The notes below the pieces were generated by a model. That model was not told the DNA's origin. It did not search any database and worked only from the letters and a program-made list of their open reading frames with translations. 64,000 nt of DNA from Haliotis cracherodii (taxonomy: Eukaryota): positions 31,496,001 to 31,560,000 of the forward strand of contig NW_027266343.1 in assembly GCF_022045235.1 (NCBI RefSeq), given 5' to 3'. How positions within the stretch are numbered: position 1 is the first letter of the stretch; the number at the start of each line of letters is the position of its first letter. Below, one piece after another: positions 7,728 to 56,549 of the stretch. Position numbers and translations under genes: made by a program.

Positions 7728-8739
7728 TCTATATGACAGAGGAAATTTTCATTTACACAAGTTTTTATTGGCAATAATAATCACAACCACAACTCGCATG
7801 ATTTATAGTGTCGCGCCGATACCCGAGAAACATTTCCTTTTTTAAGGTTCCTATGCGGTAGTGTTGTGGTCAAATCATTCGCTCGTCACGCAGAAGGCCC
7901 TGGTTGATGCCCCGCGTAGGTACGTTGTGCCCATTTAAGGTGCTTCACCCGTGGTATTACAGGAAGCTATAAGCGGCAAACTCACTCCAATATAGGCAGG
8001 TCTAAAATAAGTTATGTATATAAGGTCAAGGGCTCTTGGAAGGGGAAATTTGGCATTTGATTAAAGTTTGGTGTGCCATGCATTCAGATGATGGCTCGTG
8101 TATTTGTACCAAATTTGATCAGTTGAAAAGGATTTTGAATTATTTACTTTTGTTTTATTAAGGTGTGTTATGCATTCTCAAGAGGCCATTTTCTGTTTGA
8201 TATACTTCGACTACTTGATATAAATATTTTGGACACTGTAAGACAATGTATTACTGGGGAAATGGAATTAATATATCTTATATATCCTGCATTGCGCATT
8301 TGTTTTGTAAGAGCCAAGGTGTTTCAGCTCACGAGTACCTCTTTCTAATCGTAAGAGTCTACTAAATTGGCATCTGTGACGGTAGGAGACGTTGATTATG
8401 CTGTCAGCCACTGGTTTGTCTGCATGGCCTAGACGCAAGTATTCACATAACACGGTATGGTTTCCTGGTTGGAATAGGTCCCCAGTAACCCATGCTGGTC
8501 ATAATAGGCGACCAAATAAATGGACCGGGTGGTCAGCGTGGTTCAAAGCGTATCCTCGTACCTCGACGTCGTGGATCGTCACAATAACGAACACTGGATT
8601 GACTGACTCGATTATTTAAAGGCCGCCGTCATATAGCTGGGATATTATTTAGTGCGGCGTTAAACAACAAAACCGGTCGTGTTATAACATTCAAGTTTAA
8701 TTAAAATGTAATAATCATATTTATATTTCCGTGTCGATC

Positions 8740-8920
8740 AGGTCGGGTAGCCTAGTGGTTAAAGTTTTCGCTCGTCACGCCGAAAACCCGGGTTCGATTC
8801 CCGACATGGGTACAATGTGTGAAGCCCATTTCTGGTGTCCCCCGCCGTGATATTGCTGGAATATTGCTAAAAACGGCGTAAAACCATACTCACTCACTTA
8901 CTCACTCACTCACTCACTCC
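8740..8920 (+). mobile_element. SINE family A (tRNA-Asp-like)
   Basis: A box tagcctagtgg, B box ggttcgattcc, gtc anticodon-like loop, (actc)n tail. Confidence 0.9.
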
Positions 8921-46088: not shown

Positions 46089-46570
46089 TGAGAAAAGTAA
46101 GAATAATGTATTGATATATTGTTTGACAATGGGTATAAGGGAGAAACTTTGTGGTAATTGATTACTAGTTCAATGTTAATTTTATCACTAAGTTTAAATT
46201 ACCAAATTTCCAAACAAGCAGGGTGTCAATGTTAATTTAACGTTTTTATTTTTGCTTTTACTGTTATCAATACATGGGTTTCCTTGTAAAGATGACAGAC
46301 ACCGTTAGATGTACATACATTTATATCATAAGACTGCATAGAGGTTGTAAATGAAATGAAACACCCCACTGACGAGGTAGTGCCTCACACATTTACTGCT
46401 GCCTCTGGCCCGAAGGAACGAGATGGTATCACAATGGTAATTTCGCTCACCACCTCCACACGCACGCACGCACGCACGCACAGACACACACACTCTCACA
46501 CAACCACACACACTCTCAGATTCTAAAATAGTGCCATTAATGACATAGAACATGCCTTGGTTGACTGGGA

Positions 46571-46608
46571 GGGGCACGGATGGCCCAGTCGTCTAACGGC
46601 GCCGCAAT
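46571..46608 (+). mobile_element. SINE family D 5' piece, split by the transposon
   Basis: ggggcacggatggcccagtcgtctaacggcgccgcaAT resumes at 55479 as ATtcgctgcacag. Confidence 0.9.
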
Positions 46609-46745
46609 GGGGAGTACCGCCGTACTAATCCGCCAGGGGCGTGCGTGTACTAGTGGTCATACTCTGTGACGGTTCCGCCATTAGAATGCGCTGCGAATCA
46701 TTTAGCGCGAATTTCAAGTAGAGCCGTAGCCAAGTTTATGTGAAC

Positions 46746-46846
46746 ATGGCCAGCCAGTACCTGCTATGGTCCGTGCCAAAACTTAAATGTGCGCTCTTTC
46801 AACGAAAAGCTTCGACAGCTGGAAGGAAACTTGAACTGATCGAGAG
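46746..46846 (+). CDS. SAP-SWIM-YqaJ nuclease exon 1 (SAP-like domain)
   Basis: MASQYLLWSVPKLKCALFQRKASTAGRKLELIE(R) fits the SAP pattern V.xLK..L..R...T.G.K.ELIERL; gag|gtatgt donor. Confidence 0.8.
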
Positions 46847-47863
46847 GTATGTAACCCATTTTTTTAGTTATCAAGTATGCTTACATTCATAATCTGCGAT
46901 ATGCACCGCAATTTCTACAAGGCCCTTTTCTTGCCTGTCAAATAAGTGCCATCTATGTCACTGTCGGGCCTACTGTGACTGACAAAATCAACTATCGATA
47001 TATTTCAGTTGTTGCCTTCCATTAAACCATGACCTACTGTATAGTTACCCATAACCAAAGTACTAACTGTGGCTCCCGGTCTCAGATTATATAAATCCTC
47101 GATAAAAGGCGCAGTCTCCATTGCGTCGTCTGTTAACATTCACCGCACTCCTGAGACGTCACCTGTTTTCGAACACCCGATTGCTTTTGTAGTTTAGCGG
47201 GGCTTTTTATGAATATGATCAGCAGTGTTTTGACACGTGGTTCTCAACAAAATTCGGTACGACTTCCGCCCGTATCCGCCAACATTTTTTTCAAAAATAA
47301 TTAAAAGTACTGAGCGTCAATGCATTGGACATATTACTTTAGGATGGGGGTTTCGGGCGGAGGATTTTCCCATAATGCTTGCAAGTCGGCAGTAAAACAC
47401 AGAAGGTTAATACAACTTTGAAACCTGTTGTATTCACAAAATATAGACGTTTTTCAAATTATAGTGTTATATTTTACTCTTCCTTTTCGTCATGATATGG
47501 GCACCAAAATTCTGAATGACTTATGATAGGTGTACAGTGCAGTGCTCACTGACATTTCTGTGTCCATGAAATGATTATTGAAACTTGGCGACTCTATGTC
47601 ACATTAACAATTACCATATATTTATCCAGGTATTTTATAAAACAGGAAATGTGTAATAATTTGTCTTCTGGCTATATAGGCATGATATTATCAAACACAG
47701 TTTTAATCATACAGGTTTCATTGCTTATTCATGATGCATGTCATTTATGAGATATATTAGTCATAGTGATAATGATATGAATTATTTTCCTATAATATTA
47801 TGCCCTTATGCAAATCTGAAATAGTAGTTGCACAAGTTAAAATGTATTTAATTTTCATTTCAG

Positions 47864-48188
47864 ACTTGAATCTTATGACAGAAATGATGATTTTGTTGGG
47901 CCATCTGTCTCCATCCCACGTCCAGAAGATACATCATGGCCAGTGTCAGGATTTCAACAGCTGATGTCTTCCCATCGTCAACTGCTGCCTCCCATTTCCA
48001 AAGAAACCATTGAGGGTTACTTCATCTACCGTATGGCAGGAGACAACCAAGCTGCACATGATATCAAGGCCATAGAGAAAGGTTATCTGATGTTTGAGGG
48101 GGACAGGGTGCTGGCATGCAGTGTTCACATACGTGCATCTACTGATGTATACTTAAGTGGCATCGTCAGTGCATCTATGAAAAACAAG
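47864..48188 (+). CDS. SAP-SWIM-YqaJ nuclease exon 2
   Basis: tttcag acceptor. Translates LESYDRNDDF...KAIEKGYLMF...VSASMKNK; aag|gtaaaa donor. Confidence 0.85.
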
Positions 48189-48379
48189 GTAAAACATTTA
48201 CACACTATAAAATAAAAATAAAAAATAAAACCTTTTTAAATTATAATGAAATTTGTACTCAAAGATGAAGCTAATCCGAAATACATTCTTGACATAAAAC
48301 TGATTGAAAGTGAATTTATTAATGGGAATTTAAATTGCACGTACATCACATTATATGCATGACTTCTATGCTTGGGTTA

Positions 48380-48560
48380 ATGTGGGTAGCCTAGTGGTCC
48401 AAGTGTTTACTCATCTTGCTGAAGGCCAGGTTCAATTCCCTAAAAGGGTTCAATGTGTGAAGCCTATTTCTGGTGTCTCTAGCCTATTTCTGGTGTCTCT
48501 AGCTGTGAAAGAGCTGGAATATTGCTAAAAGTGGTGCATAACCATACATACTCACTCACT
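48380..48560 (+). mobile_element. SINE family A, CpG-decayed, in nuclease intron 2
   Basis: Consensus CpGs read as TG/CA; internal duplication agcctatttctggtgtctct; tail ends ~9 nt before exon 3. Confidence 0.85.
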
Positions 48561-48569
48561 CTATCCTAG

Positions 48570-48786
48570 GTCACATACAATTACAAGTTGAAGGTAGAGA
48601 AGACCGGGGAGCCAGTCAACTCCCACTGCGAGTGTCCCGCAGGGAAAGGACCACATTCAACCTGTAAGCACATCGCTGCGGTGCTGTTGATGTTGGAGCA
48701 TTTCATCTCAACTGGCAGTGTGCAAATTGGAAAGAGCTGTACCGAAAACTTGCAGTTGTTCCACAAGCCAAAAAAATCGTACAAAG
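48570..48786 (+). CDS. SAP-SWIM-YqaJ nuclease exon 3 (SWIM zinc finger)
   Basis: HCECPAGKGPHSTCKHIAAVL matches the SWIM pattern CxC-xn-CxH; aag|gtaggt donor. Confidence 0.9.
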
Positions 48787-49126
48787 GTAGGTTATATTAC
48801 AGCCTAGGAAATATCATACCCAGGCCTCAACTACAATGTTATAATGAGGAAGAAAATGTATGGATGTCAACTTCTATATTATGAGGTTAAGGGTGTTTCC
48901 TCATTATATAGAAGTTGACATCCATATATTCTCTTCCTTATGTGCATCACTTCTAAATGCATTAGACACGTTATGATGGTTTATGATTTTGTATATAAAA
49001 GAGAAACTGTATATCACTAAATATTATGTGTTGGATATTGGAGTGGAAAAAGTTTTTAAATATTTGTATAAGTGTTGTTTTGAACAGGATTATTATGGCG
49101 ATGTAGTATCAAAATATTGTATTCAG

Positions 49127-49389
49127 GATCACCCGTAACAGCTGCAGAACTGCCGTCAAAAAGAAAATGGTCACAGCATATGCTGGACGATCCGAGGCCA
49201 CGAAAATACAGACACATGAGTGGCTACAATGATCATGTGCGCAACATGATGACAAACTACTGCTCAAAGTCATCTCATAATATCGCCCTAAGATATCTTC
49301 ACCCAAAGGCTGATGTCCAGACAGCTGCTGAGGACCATCACTACCTTAAACAGCCACTTACAGAGTACATGGTTGACATGGCACTGAAG
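49127..49389 (+). CDS. SAP-SWIM-YqaJ nuclease exon 4
   Basis: ttcag acceptor. Translates GSPVTAAELP...DDPRP...DHHYLKQPLTEYMVDMALK; phases match. Confidence 0.85.
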
Positions 49390-49723
49390 GTACACAACAC
49401 TGGAAATTCTGTTGTATAATACATGTAAAAAAAATTTTAAAACCTAAAGTCTTTCAGATTTGATCTTTGTAATACACAGTTAAAATCATAGCTTGTGAGG
49501 AAACAGCAACATCTGAATGTTTGGGGTTGTGAGTAATTTGTAAAATGCAATAAACTAAGTTTGAAAATGCCTAATCATGATCAAGCAGATTAGTTCCCTT
49601 GTAAAAGAAATATAGACTTGTGTATTAGGCATTTTTCAGATTACTGTCATGTAAAACAAACTATGTGAAAACATAATGTTTGGGACATCTCTTTTATGTC
49701 TTGACTTTTGTTTTTCTTTACAG

Positions 49724-50371
49724 GTAACTGAGGAATCTGCGAAAGATATTGAGGCAGCAACGCAAGACCAGTCCCGGAGCCCAGTGTGGCACACAGAAAG
49801 AAAGTGGCGCCTCACAGCCTCAAGGTTTGGTGAAGTGACCAAAATGACCAACCGAAGAAATAAGGAGAAGTTATGTAAATCAATTGTGTCCACAAAAATT
49901 TTATCATGTAAGCCTGTAATTCATGGAAAGCAGTATGAAAAAATAGCACTTTCAAAATTTGAATCCATGTACAATATCAAAACAAAAAAGGCAGGTCTAT
50001 TTGTTTCCTGTTCTGAACCCTATCTGGGTGCTACGCCAGATGCCATTATTGATGCTGATATCTTGGTTGAGGTGAAATGTCCATATGCTGGAAGAAATGA
50101 TCACATTAAACCTGGTAAACATTTTCCATATCTTCATTACAATGTAAACAATCAGATTTGTTTAAATCCCAGTAGTCACTACTACTGTCAGGTACAGGGA
50201 CAGATGTACTTAGCAAAGCGTCAATTTTGCTATTTTGTTGTTTACACATTCTGTGACATGTTTGTAGAAAAGGTCAGTGTTGATAAAGATTTCTGTCAGT
50301 ACTCATTAATTCCAAAACTTGAACTGTTCTATACCAAACATCTAAGACCATACATTGCTTCTACATTGTAA
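49724..50371 (+). CDS. SAP-SWIM-YqaJ nuclease exon 5 (YqaJ/lambda-exonuclease PD-(D/E)xK domain)
   Basis: Motifs TQDQS..W..ER..RLTASRFG, HGKQYE, LGATPDA, VEVKCPY and YYCQVQGQM. The spliced CDS is 1554 nt (517 aa), open. Confidence 0.93.
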   Translation, partial: VTEESAKDIEAATQDQSRSPVWHTERKWRLTASRFGEVTKMTNRRNKEKLCKSIVSTKILSCKPVIHGKQYEKIALSKFESMYNIKTKKAGLFVSCSEPYLGATPDAIIDADILVEVKCPYAGRNDHIKPGKHFPYLHYNVNNQICLNPSSHYYCQVQGQMYLAKRQFCYFVVYTFCDMFVEKVSVDKDFCQYSLIPKLELFYTKHLRPYIASTL

Positions 50372-50564
50372 ATCATGTTTTTCCCCTTAGATACATCATT
50401 AAGGCATTTATGAGTCAGAGCTTGTGTATGTACCAGTGGTAATAACCGTATGTTTGATTCCCATTGGGAGTTTGTGTTTGTGTATTAAGCACAATCAGGT
50501 TGTCTTATTCCTGAAATTAACTCAAAATCTAAAAATGTCTTACAGTTATATCCAGATCTAATAG

Positions 50565-50700
50565 AAATATTCCTTGGACTTTTTGTTGATGATGGTCTTT
50601 TCTCTTATTCGGTAATTGGTCTCCAGCATCAAATCAACATTTTGGAAACTTACTGTGACAAATGGTGACTGTTTGTCAGTCTTTATAACTAAAGTATCAT
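50565..50700 (+). pseudogene. LINE reverse-transcriptase fragment in the transposon intergenic region
   Basis: Degenerate FVDD...S.S..GLQHQINILETYCDKW resembles the RT segment that follows YADD. Confidence 0.55.
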
Positions 50701-51866
50701 TTTATGCTTGGGTGAAGTAAACTCTGTATCACTTAAGAAAAAAAATATCCAAATAAGTTCACATATTTTCCAAATATCAATTTGTTTCACATGCTCATGT
50801 CAACATCAAATGTTATATTAATACAAATTATTATATTGTGCATACATCATGCATATTCTGTGCCTTGATCTATATTTGCAATGAATAAGCAATTTGAATT
50901 GTAAATCATACACATGTCCAATATGATTTAGCTACCATTAAGACAGTTTAGTGTGAAGTTGAAGATTCATGAAGATTCCATTTGAAGAATATACACAGTA
51001 CTCAACTAATGTTCCATATATACACACGTTTATTCAGACACTCAAGAGAAAGATTTTGGGTTTCCTCCAGATTTCACTGAACAGGTTTACAACCTGTTAC
51101 CACAATGTACATACACATTGTAAGAGCATCAGTGGAGCGGTACATTGAGCTCAGGTGTAACTACAGTACACAGAGTTAGAAATAATAATCTGCTGTGGTT
51201 TGAGACTATTACAGGTAATTGGCAAAGTTAAAATATTCTGGTTTTGGAATGCCAATCAATTGTTTGACTAAATATGGTAATACCACCAAACAAAATGACA
51301 GCATGTCACCTTTATCTTTCATTTCAAAGCTTACCATATGCATAAATAACTAAGGAAAAGAAGCAATTTCTTTGACACATGAGAGATTCACATTTTAATA
51401 TGACATGCGTGTGTCACAAGTTACACTCCATACACTTTTTGGGTCGTGAGGAGATTTTCACACTCAGTTGAAAGCCAGAAGCCAGTACAAATGTAAGGTT
51501 AGCCTTGTATGAATATGTTTTCAGTGGGATAAGCCTCAAATAACTGAAATATTGTGAGCCCATCGCTGTTAAAAACTGTCTCTTTGACTAAAAATAACAT
51601 ATGTTTGATTGAAATGGTTCAACCTTTGAAAAATGTTGGTGCAAATAATGAAGTATTTTTCAGACAATGTAGGACTATATATATCACACAAGTGATTGTC
51701 AATAGTATTCATTATGTACATCATATTAGGTATTGTTAGACTTTACCTTACAAATTGAATTTTCAACACCACCAGTCACATTTTAAAGCCTTAATGAATT
51801 CAGTTCAGCTCCATAAATGTGAAAATGTAGGTAACTTTAATACTTTATATACATATTGTCATTTAG

Positions 51867-52102
51867 TTGGTTTGTTTGTTGTTTTACGCCGCAATATTCC
51901 AGCTATATGACAGCGGTCTGTAAATCATCGAGTCTGGATCAGACAATCCTGTGATTGACATCATGAGCATCAATCCACGCAATTGGGATAGATGACATGC
52001 ATCAACCAAGTGAGCGAGCCTGACCACCCGATCCCATTAGTCGCCTTTTACGGCAAGCATGGGTTGCTGAAGACCGATTCTACCCCGGAATCTTCCCGGG
52101 TC
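51867..52102 (-). mobile_element. Family C short retroposon inside the transposon
   Basis: tgtcatttag on both flanks; 5' end GACCCG; single 22-bp unit. Confidence 0.9.
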
Positions 52103-52369
52103 TACTGTCATTTAGATTTTGTTTAAGATAAGTATCATATTAGGTTCATATGCCCAAGGTACTCTGTGATTAAAATTACCTTTTCATAGCTTTAACAACA
52201 CTCATTCAATGGTCAATAAGCTAAATACAAGAACTGTACATCTCCTTAAATCTGTTGCTCTGTATATGAAACATGTTTTCAAATTACGAGCTCTCACATG
52301 ACCACTTATTATTACGAAAAACTGTACTATAGGCCATGTGACCATACCGATTATATTACTTCTGTATAA

Positions 52370-52533
52370 GGCAGTGGGGTGGCCTTATGGCTAAAGTGTT
52401 TACTCGTCACTCCGAAGACCCGGGTTCAATTCCCGACATGGGTAACATGGGTGAAGCTCATTTCTGGTGTCCTCCACCATGATATTGCTGGAATATTGCT
52501 AAAAGCGGTGTAAAACAATTCTCAATAACTCAC
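52370..52533 (+). mobile_element. SINE family A, degenerate, just past the transposase stop
   Basis: Matches the consensus with many transitions. Confidence 0.82.
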
Positions 52534-52604
52534 ACTACTGAATAAAATTCTACTACTACTACTACTACAAATTTCAGTCACAGATATCACAAAGAAGAGA
52601 TGCT

Positions 52605-53767
52605 TCAAGCAAATTCATTTACAATGGAATTTCTGAAATTTGAAATAGCAAAACAAACATAAACAATCCGCGATCCAAGTACTACTTTACTTGGTGGGAG
52701 ATGTTTTTTCAGAATTTTGAAAGTTTTACTCAGACCAATTATACGTTCAACATGGATTCTTTTAGAAGCAATTCTTCTATCCTTAACAACATCTTCTGGT
52801 TCTAACTGTGACTTGCCTTTCAACATAGTTGGGGTGTTTACTTGAGTATCTTGGGCTGCAAATAAGTCTTGAACCATAATGCCCCTGTCAGCCATAATGC
52901 TATCTTGTTTTTCAAACATACCATGTGATGGGTTAAGTAAAGGAGACTGTTCTATGATCTGTCTGTCACTAGCAGACCCCCCAAAAGATTCACTAATAAA
53001 TGAGACTGCCCCCCTGGGTGTGCAACCGATCATAGTTTTCAATGTGTTTTGATGTTTATAGCTGGACCATGTCATGCTCTGAGCATCAACATGAGATGGC
53101 TTCTTTATCGGTATCTCTGTTGCATCCAAAATGACTCTAGTGTTTTTAAACTTCTTACCGAAATCTGTTGGCATGTGATCATCAACAGTTGCTCTTGATG
53201 GCCATATCTGTAGTTCCTTCAGTTGGAAATATAAGAAATTGATCCATGTTATTACAATTTGGGAAACAGTGGATGATGATATGCCAAACAAGAAACTTAA
53301 TTCAATGTCATCCTTGGCCTGTCTTAATTTCATTAGAGTTAAAAACAGTTGGTCTTTTGGGTGCAAGAGTTCACATTGATAGTTCAGTTCAAAAACTGCT
53401 GGACCAAGCAAGTGAAAGAAAAACATGAAATGGTCATAATCTTGGAAACCAGCAAAGTACAAAACAGCTTTGGGATTATTTATGTAGGTTTCTATGGAAC
53501 AACTTCCTAACAAACTGCACTGAGTAGACTGAGAGTCACTTTTACATGTTTCAAGAGGCTCATTCAAGCTACATGGGCTTGTGATAGCACAATCCTCTCC
53601 AATACCGATTTCCACCTCCGACGACACATTCAATATAGCTATGTTGGCTTCTTCTTCACGGAGTTGATGTGCCCTCTTTGGTCGAGTTGGTAGTGCTGAT
53701 GTACTGGTGCATGATGTATGTGGGAAGATGGAGGGAACCGCAGCTGCCCGGAGACGACTTCGTTCAC
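52605..53767 (-). CDS. THAP-HTH-DDE (DDE_Tnp_4 / Harbinger-like) transposase exon 2
   Basis: AVPSIF (end of THAP); DQLFLTLMKLR..LSFLFGISSSTVS (HTH_Tnp_4); catalytic ILDATE, MADRG and RIHVERIIG. The spliced CDS is 1365 nt (454 aa). Confidence 0.93.
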
Positions 53768-54282
53768 CTTATGTTAAATACATTTAATGTAAGTTACAGA
53801 AAAATGAAAGGTTTCAATTTATTGAAATGAAAACAAATGCATATTGAGGTGATTTTCCTCTTAATAATTAAGAAAATAAGCAAGTAGCTTTTAATTTTTT
53901 ATAAGTCTTATTAATTATATGAAAATGCAGGTGAAAATTTAACAACAATGAAGTAATGTTACATGTGGAAAGACCTCAAATTCCTCTAGTGATTTACTTA
54001 TAGAGTTTACCAATAATAGAAAATTGTACAAAACTGAGTTTCCCAGGCCTCGTTGAGTAATTCTTCCGTCGGAAGCTTCAGGCTTGTCATCGTTTGTATG
54101 GCTCCTTAAAAACAGGAATTTAACACAAAGCAACAAGAACAAACATTTAACAAGGAATCAACTAAAATAATTATATCTAAATTCACTTGCAAACATGGCA
54201 TAAATCAACAATACACAAGTTGAAGACACATTCATGGTTGTGTTTTATGATATTCATTATCTAAATGTGTGTGTACGCTATA

Positions 54283-54695
54283 CAGAGCTACAGATAAGCT
54301 GCACATTTGTGTAAAATACTCCCCAAAAATATTGAAAAGCCAATTACACACTGATTATCTTGTGTACAAAAATGCATGCATTTAAGGAAAAACTCAAATG
54401 TATGAAAACAGCATGCGTTAATACCCAATGAAGCTTTTTCAGCAATCGTAAAACAGGGCTAATTTCTGAAACACAATTATGAGCTAATTTACTGAGTCAA
54501 GCCTATATATTAAGTACAGTTATATACATCTAATGATAAATGTTCACTAATTTTGGGAAAATCCTAATCGAGTCATGAATGGATGATTGAAATAATATTG
54601 GTTACCCTTTGAAAAATGTTATACTTATAAACCATTTAAAATAGAAACCCTAGAATAAAAACTCATTTGCTCAAAAACAGTTATCTGGAGCTCTG
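54283..54695. mobile_element. ~415-bp MITE in the transposase intron
   Basis: Same TIRs and body as 2462-2879. Confidence 0.85.
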
Positions 54696-55156
54696 ATTAT
54701 AGAAATATCTTTACATTGCTTTAAGCAAGCAGAAACTTAATCATATTTACTAAGGTAAATGGGTCTGTGAATGAACAGCTGCTGAACAGTAGCATGAGGA
54801 TATTAGCTATTCAATAATAATAAATCACATTTTGACATGTATATTTTTTTCTATGAATAAATTTACTTCGTTGTTATAGTTAATAAAAGAAAGATTGTTT
54901 ACATAATAACATACATAAATAAATATACAATCAAATGTTTGGGCCTAATCATTAATGTTTGGGTCTGTGAATGAACAGCTGATAAACAGGGCCCAGTTAC
55001 CAGTATGAGGATATTGGCTATTCGATATTTGTTATAGGCTAATATATTCTGCTTTTGCGCTTTTCTTTGCCAACATACAAAAAAAACAGTAATAAAACCA
55101 TGCACAAATAATTATTTATCATTCTCAACAGACAAAATAATACTGTTTTTACGAAC

Positions 55157-55358
55157 CTAATAGTGTATCCACGAAATCATCATCAGTGAAGTGAGCCCTA
55201 CAGACTACGTCGCCTGTCCCTTGCTTCCACAGATTCTTTGTTGGAACATCAACTCTTCTTACCGCCACGCGCCACTTTTGTTGCAGGTCGGGGTCTGAAG
55301 GGTATTTATGTCCTCCAATCTTATTTTTACAACCCGGAACAGAGCAGTATCTTGGCAT
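55157..55358 (-). CDS. THAP-HTH-DDE transposase exon 1 (THAP zinc finger)
   Basis: MPRYCSVPGC...YP...W...VCRAHF is the C2CH THAP signature. tag|gttcgt donor, phase 1, joins exon 2 in frame. Confidence 0.92.
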
Positions 55359-55478
55359 AGCTGATAACGGTCGAGTGAATCTTCGATACGAGCCACTTTG
55401 AAAGCAGACTTCCGGTTGTGACTTATAACCACTAGTACATTTGCGCCACCTAGCGAGTAAATTGGGGCGGTGTCTCCC

Positions 55479-55712
55479 ATTCGCTGCACAGACTTGCGTC
55501 CCTTGGGCACGCCAGAAACCTATGATTGTGGGTTCGAATCCCGGTTCTCCCCGATTATGTATTTTGGTTTGTCAGCACCATACCCGTGCTCGTGGGTTTC
55601 ACCGAAGTGGTAAACATCTAAGACCTGCCTCATATCAGGTCTTCCTCTCACATTGAGCTGTGACGCCGTGATATAACTGGAATACTGTTAAAAGAGGCGT
55701 TAAACACAACTC
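55479..55712 (+). mobile_element. SINE family D 3' piece, split by the transposon
   Basis: Continues the consensus from 46608 through the B box, V-like core and tail. Confidence 0.9.
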
Positions 55713-56549
55713 GCTAGCTCGAAACCCTAAGAACCAAAACAAAATCTGACATCCTTACGTTTTATTGGACATCTATATATTCAATTTTAAGCTTCTTCTA
55801 CTGATGCTCCCATAGTTATCTCCCCTGTGATGTCTGATTATCTCCCTTTGTACAACACATGACATCAGTGTAAGTGAGTTGGTAGGGTTAAAAGCAGTAT
55901 GACATCTAAAGTCAGAGGATGGGACCGATCTATCCGAAATCGACGTTTTTGTCCACCAGGTGGCGCGGGACAGGGTCACGTGAACACAAGATCTGCTCTC
56001 CGATTACAGAGTTGATGGTGTCCGGTCGGAATGACAAGCAGGCTACCTATCACTGAAGATCGACAATCACATATCCAGACACCAGCATCTCGGGGGAGTC
56101 TAGCAGTGGAGATGTTAGACGGATCTCACCAATTATACAAAGGGAAAGTGCAAACCGGTCGCGCATTTAGAGACAGTGATTAATTTAGACGCCGTTTCAT
56201 CTATGATCTGACTGCAGATCCTCCGGTTAGCTCTCCCTCCTGTCATAGACTGAGGTGCACCATATAATCTGATGATGGCCTTCACCCAAACTGACGGGGC
56301 AGGGAGGACCCAGAGGTGTACGGTGACGCACTTCGCTGTACTGTGCTGAATTATGCCCCTTACCGTGTCAGAATCTCTTGGAGAAAACCCCGATTACGAT
56401 AATGGTCTGGCAGAACCAATTATCGTATTCTATGGTCTCCCCAAAGAAGAAATAGTCAAAAACCTGCATCACATGGAATATCCTTCTGCATCACTTTGAC
56501 ACGACATAACTGTTCTGTTCGAAATTCTGTTCGAAATTATGGAACACTC

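What the first reader, a model, noticed from the sequence alone, without database searches (positions are those of the whole stretch)
46609..55478. Intact two-gene ISL2EU-type transposon pairing a THAP-DDE transposase with a SAP-SWIM-YqaJ nuclease
Seen: exact ends, because the element splits a V-SINE and duplicates AT. Two convergent, intron-containing, uninterrupted CDSs (517 and 454 aa) start 137 and 120 nt inside the termini, with catalytic DDE and PD-ExK residues present. Known: ISL2EU elements of the PIF/Harbinger group make AT duplications and can encode a YqaJ exonuclease instead of the Myb/SANT partner of classic Harbingers. To my knowledge the mechanism has not been worked out. Inference: a potentially active, fully delimited two-component transposition system suitable for reconstitution.
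Basis: partly seen in the sequence, partly recalled or inferred. Interest (0 to 1): 0.8.

Follow-up and report, generated by a model that had tools for sequence, protein, structure and literature searches.

The report
Intact two-gene ISL2EU DNA transposon
This is a complete, young copy of an already described kind of jumping gene (ISL2EU) that carries a cutting-and-pasting enzyme plus a DNA-chewing nuclease; it is a good specimen for testing what the nuclease does, but not a new kind of element.

Summary
Window 46609-55478 is an 8,870-bp DNA transposon. It has imperfect ~60-bp inverted ends starting GGG and sits inside a tRNA-derived SINE. Twenty-two intact copies of that SINE show a single AT where this copy has AT on each side, so the 2-bp duplication at an A|AT|T target is real.

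Two convergent genes are uninterrupted. One is a 5-exon, 517-aa SAP-SWIM-YqaJ (lambda-exonuclease-like) protein. The other is a 2-exon, 454-aa THAP-HTH-DDE_Tnp_4 transposase. The catalytic signatures are present in both.

About 10-15 copies exist in this 1.18-Gb genome:
- one 99.7% identical copy, also with both genes open but lacking the right end;
- older full-length copies (2.3-2.6% diverged) with both genes broken;
- internally deleted derivatives.

Genome-wide, 57 of 96 transposase-like hits have a YqaJ hit within 12 kb. Contigs from three related organisms show the exon 2/3 junction spliced as predicted.

All of this matches the published ISL2EU group (PMC4122938, PMC4482050, PMC9179366). 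It is therefore a new member of a known kind. The scan has noted sister elements elsewhere in this genome. The nuclease's role remains untested in the literature I could search. Current activity is plausible but unproven.

The parts
46567..46608 (+). 5' part of the host tRNA-derived SINE, ending in the left copy of the AT duplication (46607-46608)
   Evidence: Aligns to the head of 22 intact SINE copies.
46609..46670 (+). Left terminal inverted repeat. Imperfect, about 60 nt, starting GGGGAGTACCGCC.
   Evidence: Global alignment with the reverse complement of the right end. The terminus is conserved in 9 copies.
46646..46657 (+). Subterminal 12-mer TGTACTAGTGGT, a candidate transposase (THAP/HTH) binding site (inferred)
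   Evidence: It is the only k-mer of 7 nt or more shared by the two ends. It lies 38-49 nt from the left end and 40-51 nt from the right end, inverted.
46746..46846 (+). Gene A exon 1 (SAP motif)
   Evidence: Pfam SAP E=0.037 alone. It is 47% identical to a paralogue's SAP exon that scores 1.3e-9. A GT donor follows.
47864..48188 (+). Gene A exon 2 (no Pfam family)
   Evidence: Contigs begin at 47862 (an AG ambiguity of 2 nt). X18 record 17 joins it directly to exon 3.
48570..48786 (+). Gene A exon 3 (SWIM zinc finger)
   Evidence: Pfam SWIM 3.9e-5. Spliced contig. Aligns to residues 101-168 of the paralogue's single ORF.
49127..49389 (+). Gene A exon 4 (linker, no Pfam family)
   Evidence: Aligns to paralogue ORF residues 173-248, abutting exon 3's match.
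49724..50371 (+). Gene A exon 5 (YqaJ / lambda-exonuclease-like PD-(D/E)xK nuclease), including the stop codon
   Evidence: Pfam YqaJ 1.2e-15. Matches 3syy, 5yet and 1avq with PD..EvK aligned. A contig starts at 49722.
52605..53767 (-). Gene B exon 2 (HTH_Tnp_4 plus DDE_Tnp_4 catalytic core), including the stop codon
   Evidence: Pfam 1.5e-12 and 1e-40. PHIS DDE signature matched. X17 contig 16 ends exactly at 53767.
55157..55358 (-). Gene B exon 1 (THAP zinc finger)
   Evidence: Pfam THAP 1.7e-10. A paralogous family has the same THAP exon / intron / DDE exon layout.
55428..55439 (-). Right copy of the subterminal 12-mer (ACCACTAGTACA on the + strand)
   Evidence: read directly.
55417..55478 (-). 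Right terminal inverted repeat, whose reverse complement starts GGGAGACACCGCC
55479..55720 (+). Right copy of the AT duplication (55479-55480) and the 3' part of the host SINE
   Evidence: 92-95% identical over up to 162 nt to the SINE copies found (3,564 first-look candidates).
50372..52604 (.). Spacer between the convergent genes (probable 3' UTRs). It carries SINE-derived fragments at about 51870-52110 and 52370-52540.
   Evidence: Collinear in the other full-length copies. Covered by contigs in all four runs, with extreme depth over the SINE parts.

Best explanation
Identity. This is an autonomous ISL2EU-group (PHIS / Harbinger-like) cut-and-paste DNA transposon, inserted into a SINE.

Shown: exact ends, the AT duplication at an AATT site, imperfect TIRs, two intact convergent genes with catalytic signatures, a small young family with decayed and internally deleted relatives, and splicing of gene A in related organisms.

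Inferred mechanism:
- The transposase recognises the ends through its THAP zinc finger and HTH. The shared subterminal TGTACTAGTGGT is the candidate site.
- Its DDE core cuts the element out and joins the 3'-OH ends to a target cut with a 2-nt stagger at A|AT|T. Repair of that stagger gives the AT duplication.
- The SAP-SWIM-YqaJ protein is an accessory 5'->3' exonuclease-type enzyme brought to DNA by SAP/SWIM. It acts on the breaks the transposase makes.

My preferred role for the nuclease is resection of the donor-site break, so that the break is repaired from the sister copy and the element is kept (about 35%). About equally likely is TnsA-like processing of the 5' non-transferred strand at the element ends (about 30-35%). 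The remaining probability goes to other roles or a dispensable one.

The confidence given is for the identity and anatomy, not for the nuclease's role.
For: - Ends and TSD.
- TIR and subterminal motif.
- Domains.
- DDE signature.
- Nuclease motif aligned to solved lambda-exo-type enzymes.
- Copies: 99.7% identical C2 copy with both CDS open, C5 and C7 full-length copies with both genes present but broken, and a 746-bp deletion derivative with perfect ends and AT flanks.
- Pairing of the two gene types: 57 of 96 transposase hits have a YqaJ hit within 12 kb, against about 0.0015 expected per hit.
- SWIM and SAP travel with YqaJ in a 36-45%-identical family.
- Spliced exon 2/3 contig, and contig ends at predicted splice sites.
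- Published definition of ISL2EU.
Against: - Mobility of this copy was not observed. No empty-site allele or excision footprint was looked at, because the 6-kb read limit cannot span both ends.
- The runs with spliced contigs are from other organisms (B, C, D), are only guessed to be RNA, and also contain unspliced forms.
- The transposase intron's donor (55157) is supported only by frame, a conserved GT and the paralogue's layout. An alternative 3-exon model of 474 aa exists (extra exon 54104-54035, acceptor 53757).
- The single-ORF sister group Spy transposes without any partner (PMC11304231). This argues that the DDE enzyme may not need the nuclease for strand cleavage.
- The transposase was not placed in a tree with reference ISL2EU sequences.
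Confidence: 0.9

Rival explanations
1. The copy is structurally intact but no longer mobile in this species. It may be silenced, carry subtle inactivating missense changes, or be the last survivor of a dying family.
For: The family is small, about 10-15 copies, and most are broken. The only other copy with open genes lacks its right end. No RNA run of the same species held the element; X24 held 0.04 of the words. Convergent transcripts that cover the whole spacer could form double-stranded RNA and feed silencing (inference).
Against: The two youngest copies differ by 0.29% and sit at different loci. A 98%-identical deletion derivative has intact ends and an AT duplication. Both ORFs are free of stops and frameshifts although neutral decay has broken every older copy.
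Confidence: 0.4
2. The YqaJ-type protein is the second catalytic subunit of a two-nuclease transposase, working like TnsA beside TnsB in Tn7. It would cut or trim the 5' non-transferred strand at each end while the DDE enzyme makes the 3'-OH ends.
For: It has a PD-(D/E)xK fold with its catalytic residues intact. It is strictly and anciently linked to the transposase across diverged families. It has its own DNA-binding modules, SAP and SWIM. The Tn7 analogy comes from established knowledge, not from a test here.
Against: Its closest solved relatives are processive 5'->3' exonucleases, not site-specific endonucleases. The sister group Spy works with a single protein. There are no interaction data.
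Confidence: 0.3
3. The two genes belong to two unrelated units. Either a Harbinger-type transposon captured a host or viral nuclease gene in this lineage only, or one element is nested inside another.
For: None specific. The spacer between the genes does contain SINE fragments, showing that foreign DNA has entered the element.
Against: The same gene pair recurs at 57 loci in families down to about 30-40% identity, mostly in the same convergent order. The full-length copies are collinear from end to end. There are no internal TIRs or duplications around gene A. The pairing is the published hallmark of ISL2EU.
Confidence: 0.02
4. It is a domesticated host gene pair rather than a transposon.
For: Both ORFs are intact and at least gene A is spliced and expressed in related organisms. 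An earlier scan note reports a possibly domesticated THAP-DDE gene elsewhere in this genome (not checked).
Against: It is multi-copy at unrelated loci with TIRs and target duplications. It is inserted in a SINE. Decayed copies and deletion derivatives exist.
Confidence: 0.02

Closest known systems
ISL2EU group of the PHIS (PIF/Harbinger-ISL2EU-Spy) superfamily (Repbase superfamily ISL2EU; Han et al. 2014 PMC4122938; Han et al. 2015 PMC4482050; PMC9179366)
   Same: THAP plus HTH plus DDE transposase, a second ORF with a YqaJ exonuclease domain, a 2-bp AT duplication at A|AT|T, TIRs starting GG, and animal hosts including molluscs.
   Different: Nothing of kind. Details not stated in the papers I read: the partner protein also carries SAP and SWIM modules (conserved in at least two families here); both genes have introns (4 and 1); the length is 8.9 kb; the genes are convergent; and SINE fragments are built into the family's sequence. 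I could not check whether this exact family is already in Repbase or Dfam.
PIF/Harbinger sensu stricto
   Same: Related DDE_Tnp_4 transposase, a two-gene design, and AT-rich targets.
   Different: Harbinger makes 3-bp duplications. Its partner is a Myb/SANT (or MADF) DNA-binding protein without enzymatic activity. Here the duplication is 2 bp and the partner is a nuclease.
Spy transposons (sister clade of ISL2EU; cgSpy shown active, PMC11304231)
   Same: Closely related DDE core and a palindromic A/T target.
   Different: Spy has one ORF, no THAP domain and no target duplication (AAA|TTT).
Lambda exonuclease / YqaJ / LHK-Exo (PDB 1avq, 3syy) and Mimivirus R354 (5yet)
   Same: Exon 5 of gene A matches these enzymes, with the PD...E-x-K catalytic motif aligned.
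   Different: Those enzymes work with a single-strand annealing protein in phage or virus recombination. Here the nuclease is fused to SAP and SWIM and is paired with a transposase, and no annealing protein is encoded.
Tn7 TnsA/TnsB (functional analogy only)
   Same: A PD-(D/E)xK nuclease encoded next to a DDE transposase.
   Different: There is no sequence relationship. TnsA is restriction-endonuclease-like, whereas gene A is lambda-exo-like. The analogy is untested.

Membership tests
ISL2EU | Transposase with a DDE_Tnp_4-type core carrying the PHIS signature D(19-29)K(29)D(18-40)D(11-19)P(18-28)R(3)E | tested here: met
   Pfam DDE_Tnp_4 1e-40. A regular expression for the signature matches residues 214-340 of the large exon.
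ISL2EU | N-terminal THAP (and HTH) DNA-binding domain in the transposase | tested here: met
   THAP 1.7e-10 in exon 1 and HTH_Tnp_4 1.5e-12 in exon 2.
ISL2EU | [quoted passage not shown] | tested here: met
   YqaJ 1.2e-15. Collinear in the full-length copies L011, L013 and L015. Paired genome-wide.
ISL2EU | 2-bp target site duplication, typically AT, at A|AT|T | tested here: met
   Paralogous empty sites in 22 SINE copies show one AT. All copies are flanked AAT|...|ATT.
ISL2EU | TIRs (6-259 bp) beginning with GG | tested here: met
   GGGGAG... and GGGAGA..., imperfect, about 60 nt.
ISL2EU | Transposase falls in the ISL2EU clade, not the Harbinger, Spy, Pangu or Nuwa clades, in a tree with reference sequences | not tested
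PIF/Harbinger sensu stricto | 3-bp duplication and a Myb/SANT-type partner protein | tested here: not met
   The duplication is 2 bp. The partner is SAP-SWIM-YqaJ, with no Myb/SANT hit.
Spy | Single ORF, no target duplication, insertion at AAA|TTT | tested here: not met
   Two ORFs and an AT duplication.
Currently active autonomous element | Both ORFs intact and both termini present in one copy | tested here: met
   Window copy. The C2 copy has open genes but no right end.
Currently active autonomous element | Both genes transcribed and correctly spliced in the host | tested here: inconclusive
   The exon 2/3 junction and contig ends at splice sites were seen in contigs of organisms B-D, which are only guessed to be RNA. 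No RNA holder from the same species was found. The transposase junction was not seen directly.
Currently active autonomous element | Insertion polymorphism, excision footprints or new insertions | not tested

The most novel reading that the evidence does not exclude
The window copy is a naturally active ISL2EU element whose lambda-exonuclease-like partner is an obligatory second nuclease of the transposition reaction. The partner would either process the 5' strand at the element ends or resect the donor break so that the element is restored by homologous repair. Near-identical, expressed copies in at least three related organisms would then reflect ongoing activity, or recent transfer, rather than mere shared ancestry.
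Probability: 0.2. Interest if true: 0.6.

Novelty: new member of a known kind. Interest (0 to 1): 0.25.

Why it matters
The ISL2EU design, a DDE transposase plus a YqaJ nuclease, has been catalogued since at least 2014-2015. The papers I could search still say the partner's function is unknown, and none reports a reconstituted ISL2EU. A natural copy with exact ends, both genes open, a validated exon structure and a candidate binding motif is a ready substrate for that experiment. Beyond that it is ordinary genome annotation. This genome holds dozens of such elements in several families, and potentially active ISL2EU families were already listed in 2015.

Tried and rejected
- The repeat finder did not list the TIR among its 25 longest inverted repeats, because the TIR is imperfect and gapped. 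A direct global alignment showed it.
- I looked for the missing right end of the C2 copy within 9.9 kb downstream and found none. That copy is therefore truncated or interrupted by something larger.
- I considered a 3-exon transposase model of 474 aa (extra exon 54104-54035 with acceptor 53757). It is not excluded, but a contig ends at 53767, not 53757, and a 40%-identical paralogue has the 2-exon layout.
- A sequence search of solved structures with the transposase exon gave nothing meaningful; the best hit was a kinase at E 0.29.
- A test for fewer substitutions in exons than elsewhere between the two youngest copies was not significant (5/2919 against 20/5850, p=0.2). Against the older copies, exons do differ less (p=0.001 and 0.03).
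- The large protein searches, structure prediction and fold search were not run, because the family scans left nothing open.
- The joined (spliced) proteins were never sent to any search or fold tool. All searches were exon by exon. One script concatenated exons only to count length and stop codons, and printed no joined sequence.


Full report
**What is there.** The stretch 46609-55478 (8,870 bp) begins GGGGAGTACCGCC and ends GGCGGTGTCTCCC. Immediately outside lie ...GCCGCAAT on the left and ATTCGCTG... on the right. The flanks are the two halves of a tRNA-derived SINE that gave 3,564 first-look candidates in this 1.18-Gb genome. In 22 other copies of that SINE the same place reads GCCGC(G/A)AT-TCGCTG, with a single AT. 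The element therefore duplicated AT on insertion. The local site was AATT, produced here by a G-to-A change in the SINE's CG. All other copies of the family that I fetched are flanked AAT| on the left and |ATT on the right. This is the A|AT|T target published for ISL2EU (PMC4482050). I did not test whether the SINE is a 'V-SINE'.

**Ends.** The two ends form an imperfect, gapped inverted repeat of about 60 nt. The only word of 7 nt or more shared by the terminal ~130 nt of both ends is TGTACTAGTGGT. It lies 38-49 nt from the left end (46646-46657) and 40-51 nt from the right end (55428-55439, inverted). I take it as the candidate binding site for the transposase; that is inference.

**Gene A.** Gene A (+ strand) has five exons: 46746-46846, 47864-48188, 48570-48786, 49127-49389 and 49724-50371. 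All have GT-AG borders and sum to 1554 nt, i.e. 517 aa plus stop. Searched exon by exon, Pfam gives:
- exon 1: SAP at E=0.037, below threshold;
- exon 3: SWIM at 3.9e-5;
- exon 5: YqaJ at 1.2e-15, and Viral_alk_exo at 9e-6.

Exon 5 also matches the solved lambda-exonuclease-type enzymes LHK-Exo (3syy), Mimivirus R354 (5yet) and lambda exonuclease (1avq). The motif G-A-T-P-D ... V-E-V-K-C-P aligns to their catalytic PD...E-x-K.

**Gene B.** Gene B (- strand) has exons 55358-55157 and 53767-52605, together 1365 nt, i.e. 454 aa plus stop. Exon 1 is a THAP finger (1.7e-10). Exon 2 holds HTH_Tnp_4 (1.5e-12) and DDE_Tnp_4 (1e-40). It also matches the PHIS catalytic signature D(19-29)K(29)D(18-40)D(11-19)P(18-28)R(3)E quoted in PMC4122938.

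**Support for the exon models.** One script joined exons only to count length and stops. Three lines of evidence support the models.

1. Contigs of four public runs from three other organisms were laid on 47850-53849. The run type 'RNA' is only a guess by the tool.
   - X18 record 17 places 47862-48186 and 48568-48784 side by side in one contig. This is the exon 2/exon 3 junction, with a 2-nt AG ambiguity. Its remaining 142 and 28 letters lie beyond both exons.
   - X17 record 9 has the same layout.
   - Other contigs start or stop at 47862, 49722 and 53767, which are predicted acceptors.
   - X17 and X18 have zero depth in the bin inside intron 4.
   - Unspliced contigs are also present (X15 records 2, 3 and 8; X19 record 31).
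   - No intron-less DNA copy of this family was seen in the genome, so RNA is the likelier source of the joined form.
2. A paralogous family on another chromosome (L053; 36-45% amino-acid identity) has one uninterrupted 481-aa ORF. Exons 2, 3, 4 and 5 of gene A align to it in order. Exons 3, 4 and 5 match abutting stretches (101-168, 173-248, 259-459). Exon 2 aligns only over its first 52 residues (ORF residues 5-54), so the exon 2/3 junction rests on the spliced contig, not on this comparison. The ORF is preceded by a separate exon that scores SAP at 1.3e-9 and is 47% identical to gene A exon 1. The same family has a THAP exon, an intron and a DDE ORF laid out like gene B.
3. The splice dinucleotides are kept in every copy that retains the exons.

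The donor of the transposase intron (55157) was not seen in reads. A 3-exon alternative of 474 aa remains possible but is less supported.

**The family.** Searches with the left end, the right end and the coding exons find about 10-15 copies.
- One copy on contig C2 (L011) is 99.7% identical (0.29% substitutions over 8,769 nt) and sits at a different site. Both coding sequences are open. Its last 77 bp, including the right end, are replaced by unrelated DNA and do not reappear within 9.9 kb.
- Two full-length copies (C5 and C7; 2.3-2.6% diverged) have both genes inside the same ends, both with frameshifts and stops.
- Others are truncated or internally deleted. One is a 746-bp derivative (L016) that joins positions 1-500 to 8623-8870 and keeps perfect ends and AT flanks.

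Among the copies seen, the window copy is therefore the only one with both genes open and both ends present.

**The pairing is general.** Six-frame searches of the whole genome found 96 separate transposase-like loci and 75 YqaJ-like loci. Fifty-seven of the transposase loci have a YqaJ locus within 12 kb, with a median gap of 2.1 kb. Forty-six pairs are convergent as here, and ten are divergent. About 0.0015 per locus is expected by chance. SWIM-exon relatives sit in the same open frames as YqaJ in several of these families. The SAP-SWIM-YqaJ partner is thus a conserved component, not a local accident. Earlier notes of this scan describe similar two-gene elements on other pieces of this genome, which agrees.

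**Comparison with what is known.** Han et al. 2014 (PMC4122938), the 2015 PHIS survey (PMC4482050) and a 2022 teleost study (PMC9179366) define ISL2EU by exactly these features: a THAP/HTH-DDE transposase, a second ORF with a YqaJ exonuclease domain, an AT duplication at A|AT|T, and TIRs starting GG. The 2015 paper already lists 12 potentially active families and states that the function of the extra ORF is unknown. Among the 25 papers since 2021 that mention ISL2EU in the searchable library, none reports a reconstitution. The single-ORF sister group Spy has been shown active. All testable membership features are met. Only the phylogenetic placement against reference sequences, and a Repbase/Dfam look-up, could not be done.

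**How it probably works.** Shown: the anatomy above. Inferred: the THAP and HTH modules bind the subterminal motif, and the DDE core excises the element and inserts it with a 2-nt stagger at AATT. The partner protein is a lambda-exonuclease-type 5'->3' nuclease with its own DNA or chromatin modules. I think it most likely resects the donor break to favour copying the element back from the sister chromatid (about 35%). Alternatively it processes the 5' strand at the element ends in the manner of TnsA beside TnsB (about 30-35%). Spy works alone, which speaks against an absolute need for a second nuclease in strand cleavage.

**Verdict.** It is a new member of a known kind. Interest is modest: it is a clean natural substrate for an open but already recognised question.

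Noticed in passing
G000 C9:7060141-7062082, and at least 8 similar loci (C12:15995578, C34:55463027, C34:38918113, C56:9330315, C3:24842827, C3:32788204, C45:18900570): This is another ISL2EU-like family in which the transposase and YqaJ genes are divergent and only 380 bp apart. Open frames of 379 and 277 aa, without stops, occur in most copies. It looks more abundant and at least as well preserved as the family in the window.
   Followed up: partly
L053 (G000 C34:68212500-68221500); sister copies at C10:24871779, C2:34549957, C8:3347093: This paralogous family is 36-45% identical. Its SWIM-YqaJ part is one uninterrupted 481-aa ORF, its SAP exon passes the Pfam threshold, and its transposase has the same THAP exon / intron / DDE exon layout. 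Several copies have open frames of 431 and 502 aa.
   Followed up: partly
window 48844-48941: A near-perfect palindrome (43-nt arms, 91% complementary, 12-nt loop) sits in intron 3 of gene A. It is covered at thousands-fold summed depth in all four runs, so it is probably a very abundant MITE-like repeat.
   Followed up: no
window 48385-48540, 51870-52110, 52370-52540: SINE-derived fragments lie inside intron 2 and in the spacer between the genes. They are collinear in the other full-length copies, so they were part of the element before it multiplied. At 48462-48504 a 21-nt unit is tandemly duplicated.
   Followed up: partly
window 50372-52604: Contigs from all four runs cover the whole 2.2-kb spacer between the two convergent stop codons. 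If they are RNA, the two transcripts may overlap tail to tail and could form double-stranded RNA. This is speculation and the strands are not known.
   Followed up: no
runs X9-X20 (organisms B, C, D): The element is present in three other organisms at roughly 98-99% identity, in both exons and spacer. Their relation to the host of the window is coded, so shared ancestry and horizontal transfer cannot be told apart.
   Followed up: no
L016 (G000 C7:25270985-25271730); also C9:25657606-25657802 and C1:16805231-16805380: These are short, internally deleted derivatives (about 750 bp and about 200 bp) that keep both ends of the family. They are MITE-like non-autonomous relatives in very low copy number.
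   Followed up: partly
window 46455-46525: A (CACG)n/(CA)n microsatellite lies just upstream of the host SINE.
   Followed up: no
window 47093-47206 (element positions 485-598, intron 1 of gene A): This stretch matches more than 20 other loci in the genome at 73-80% identity, independently of the element. It is another dispersed repeat embedded in intron 1.
   Followed up: no
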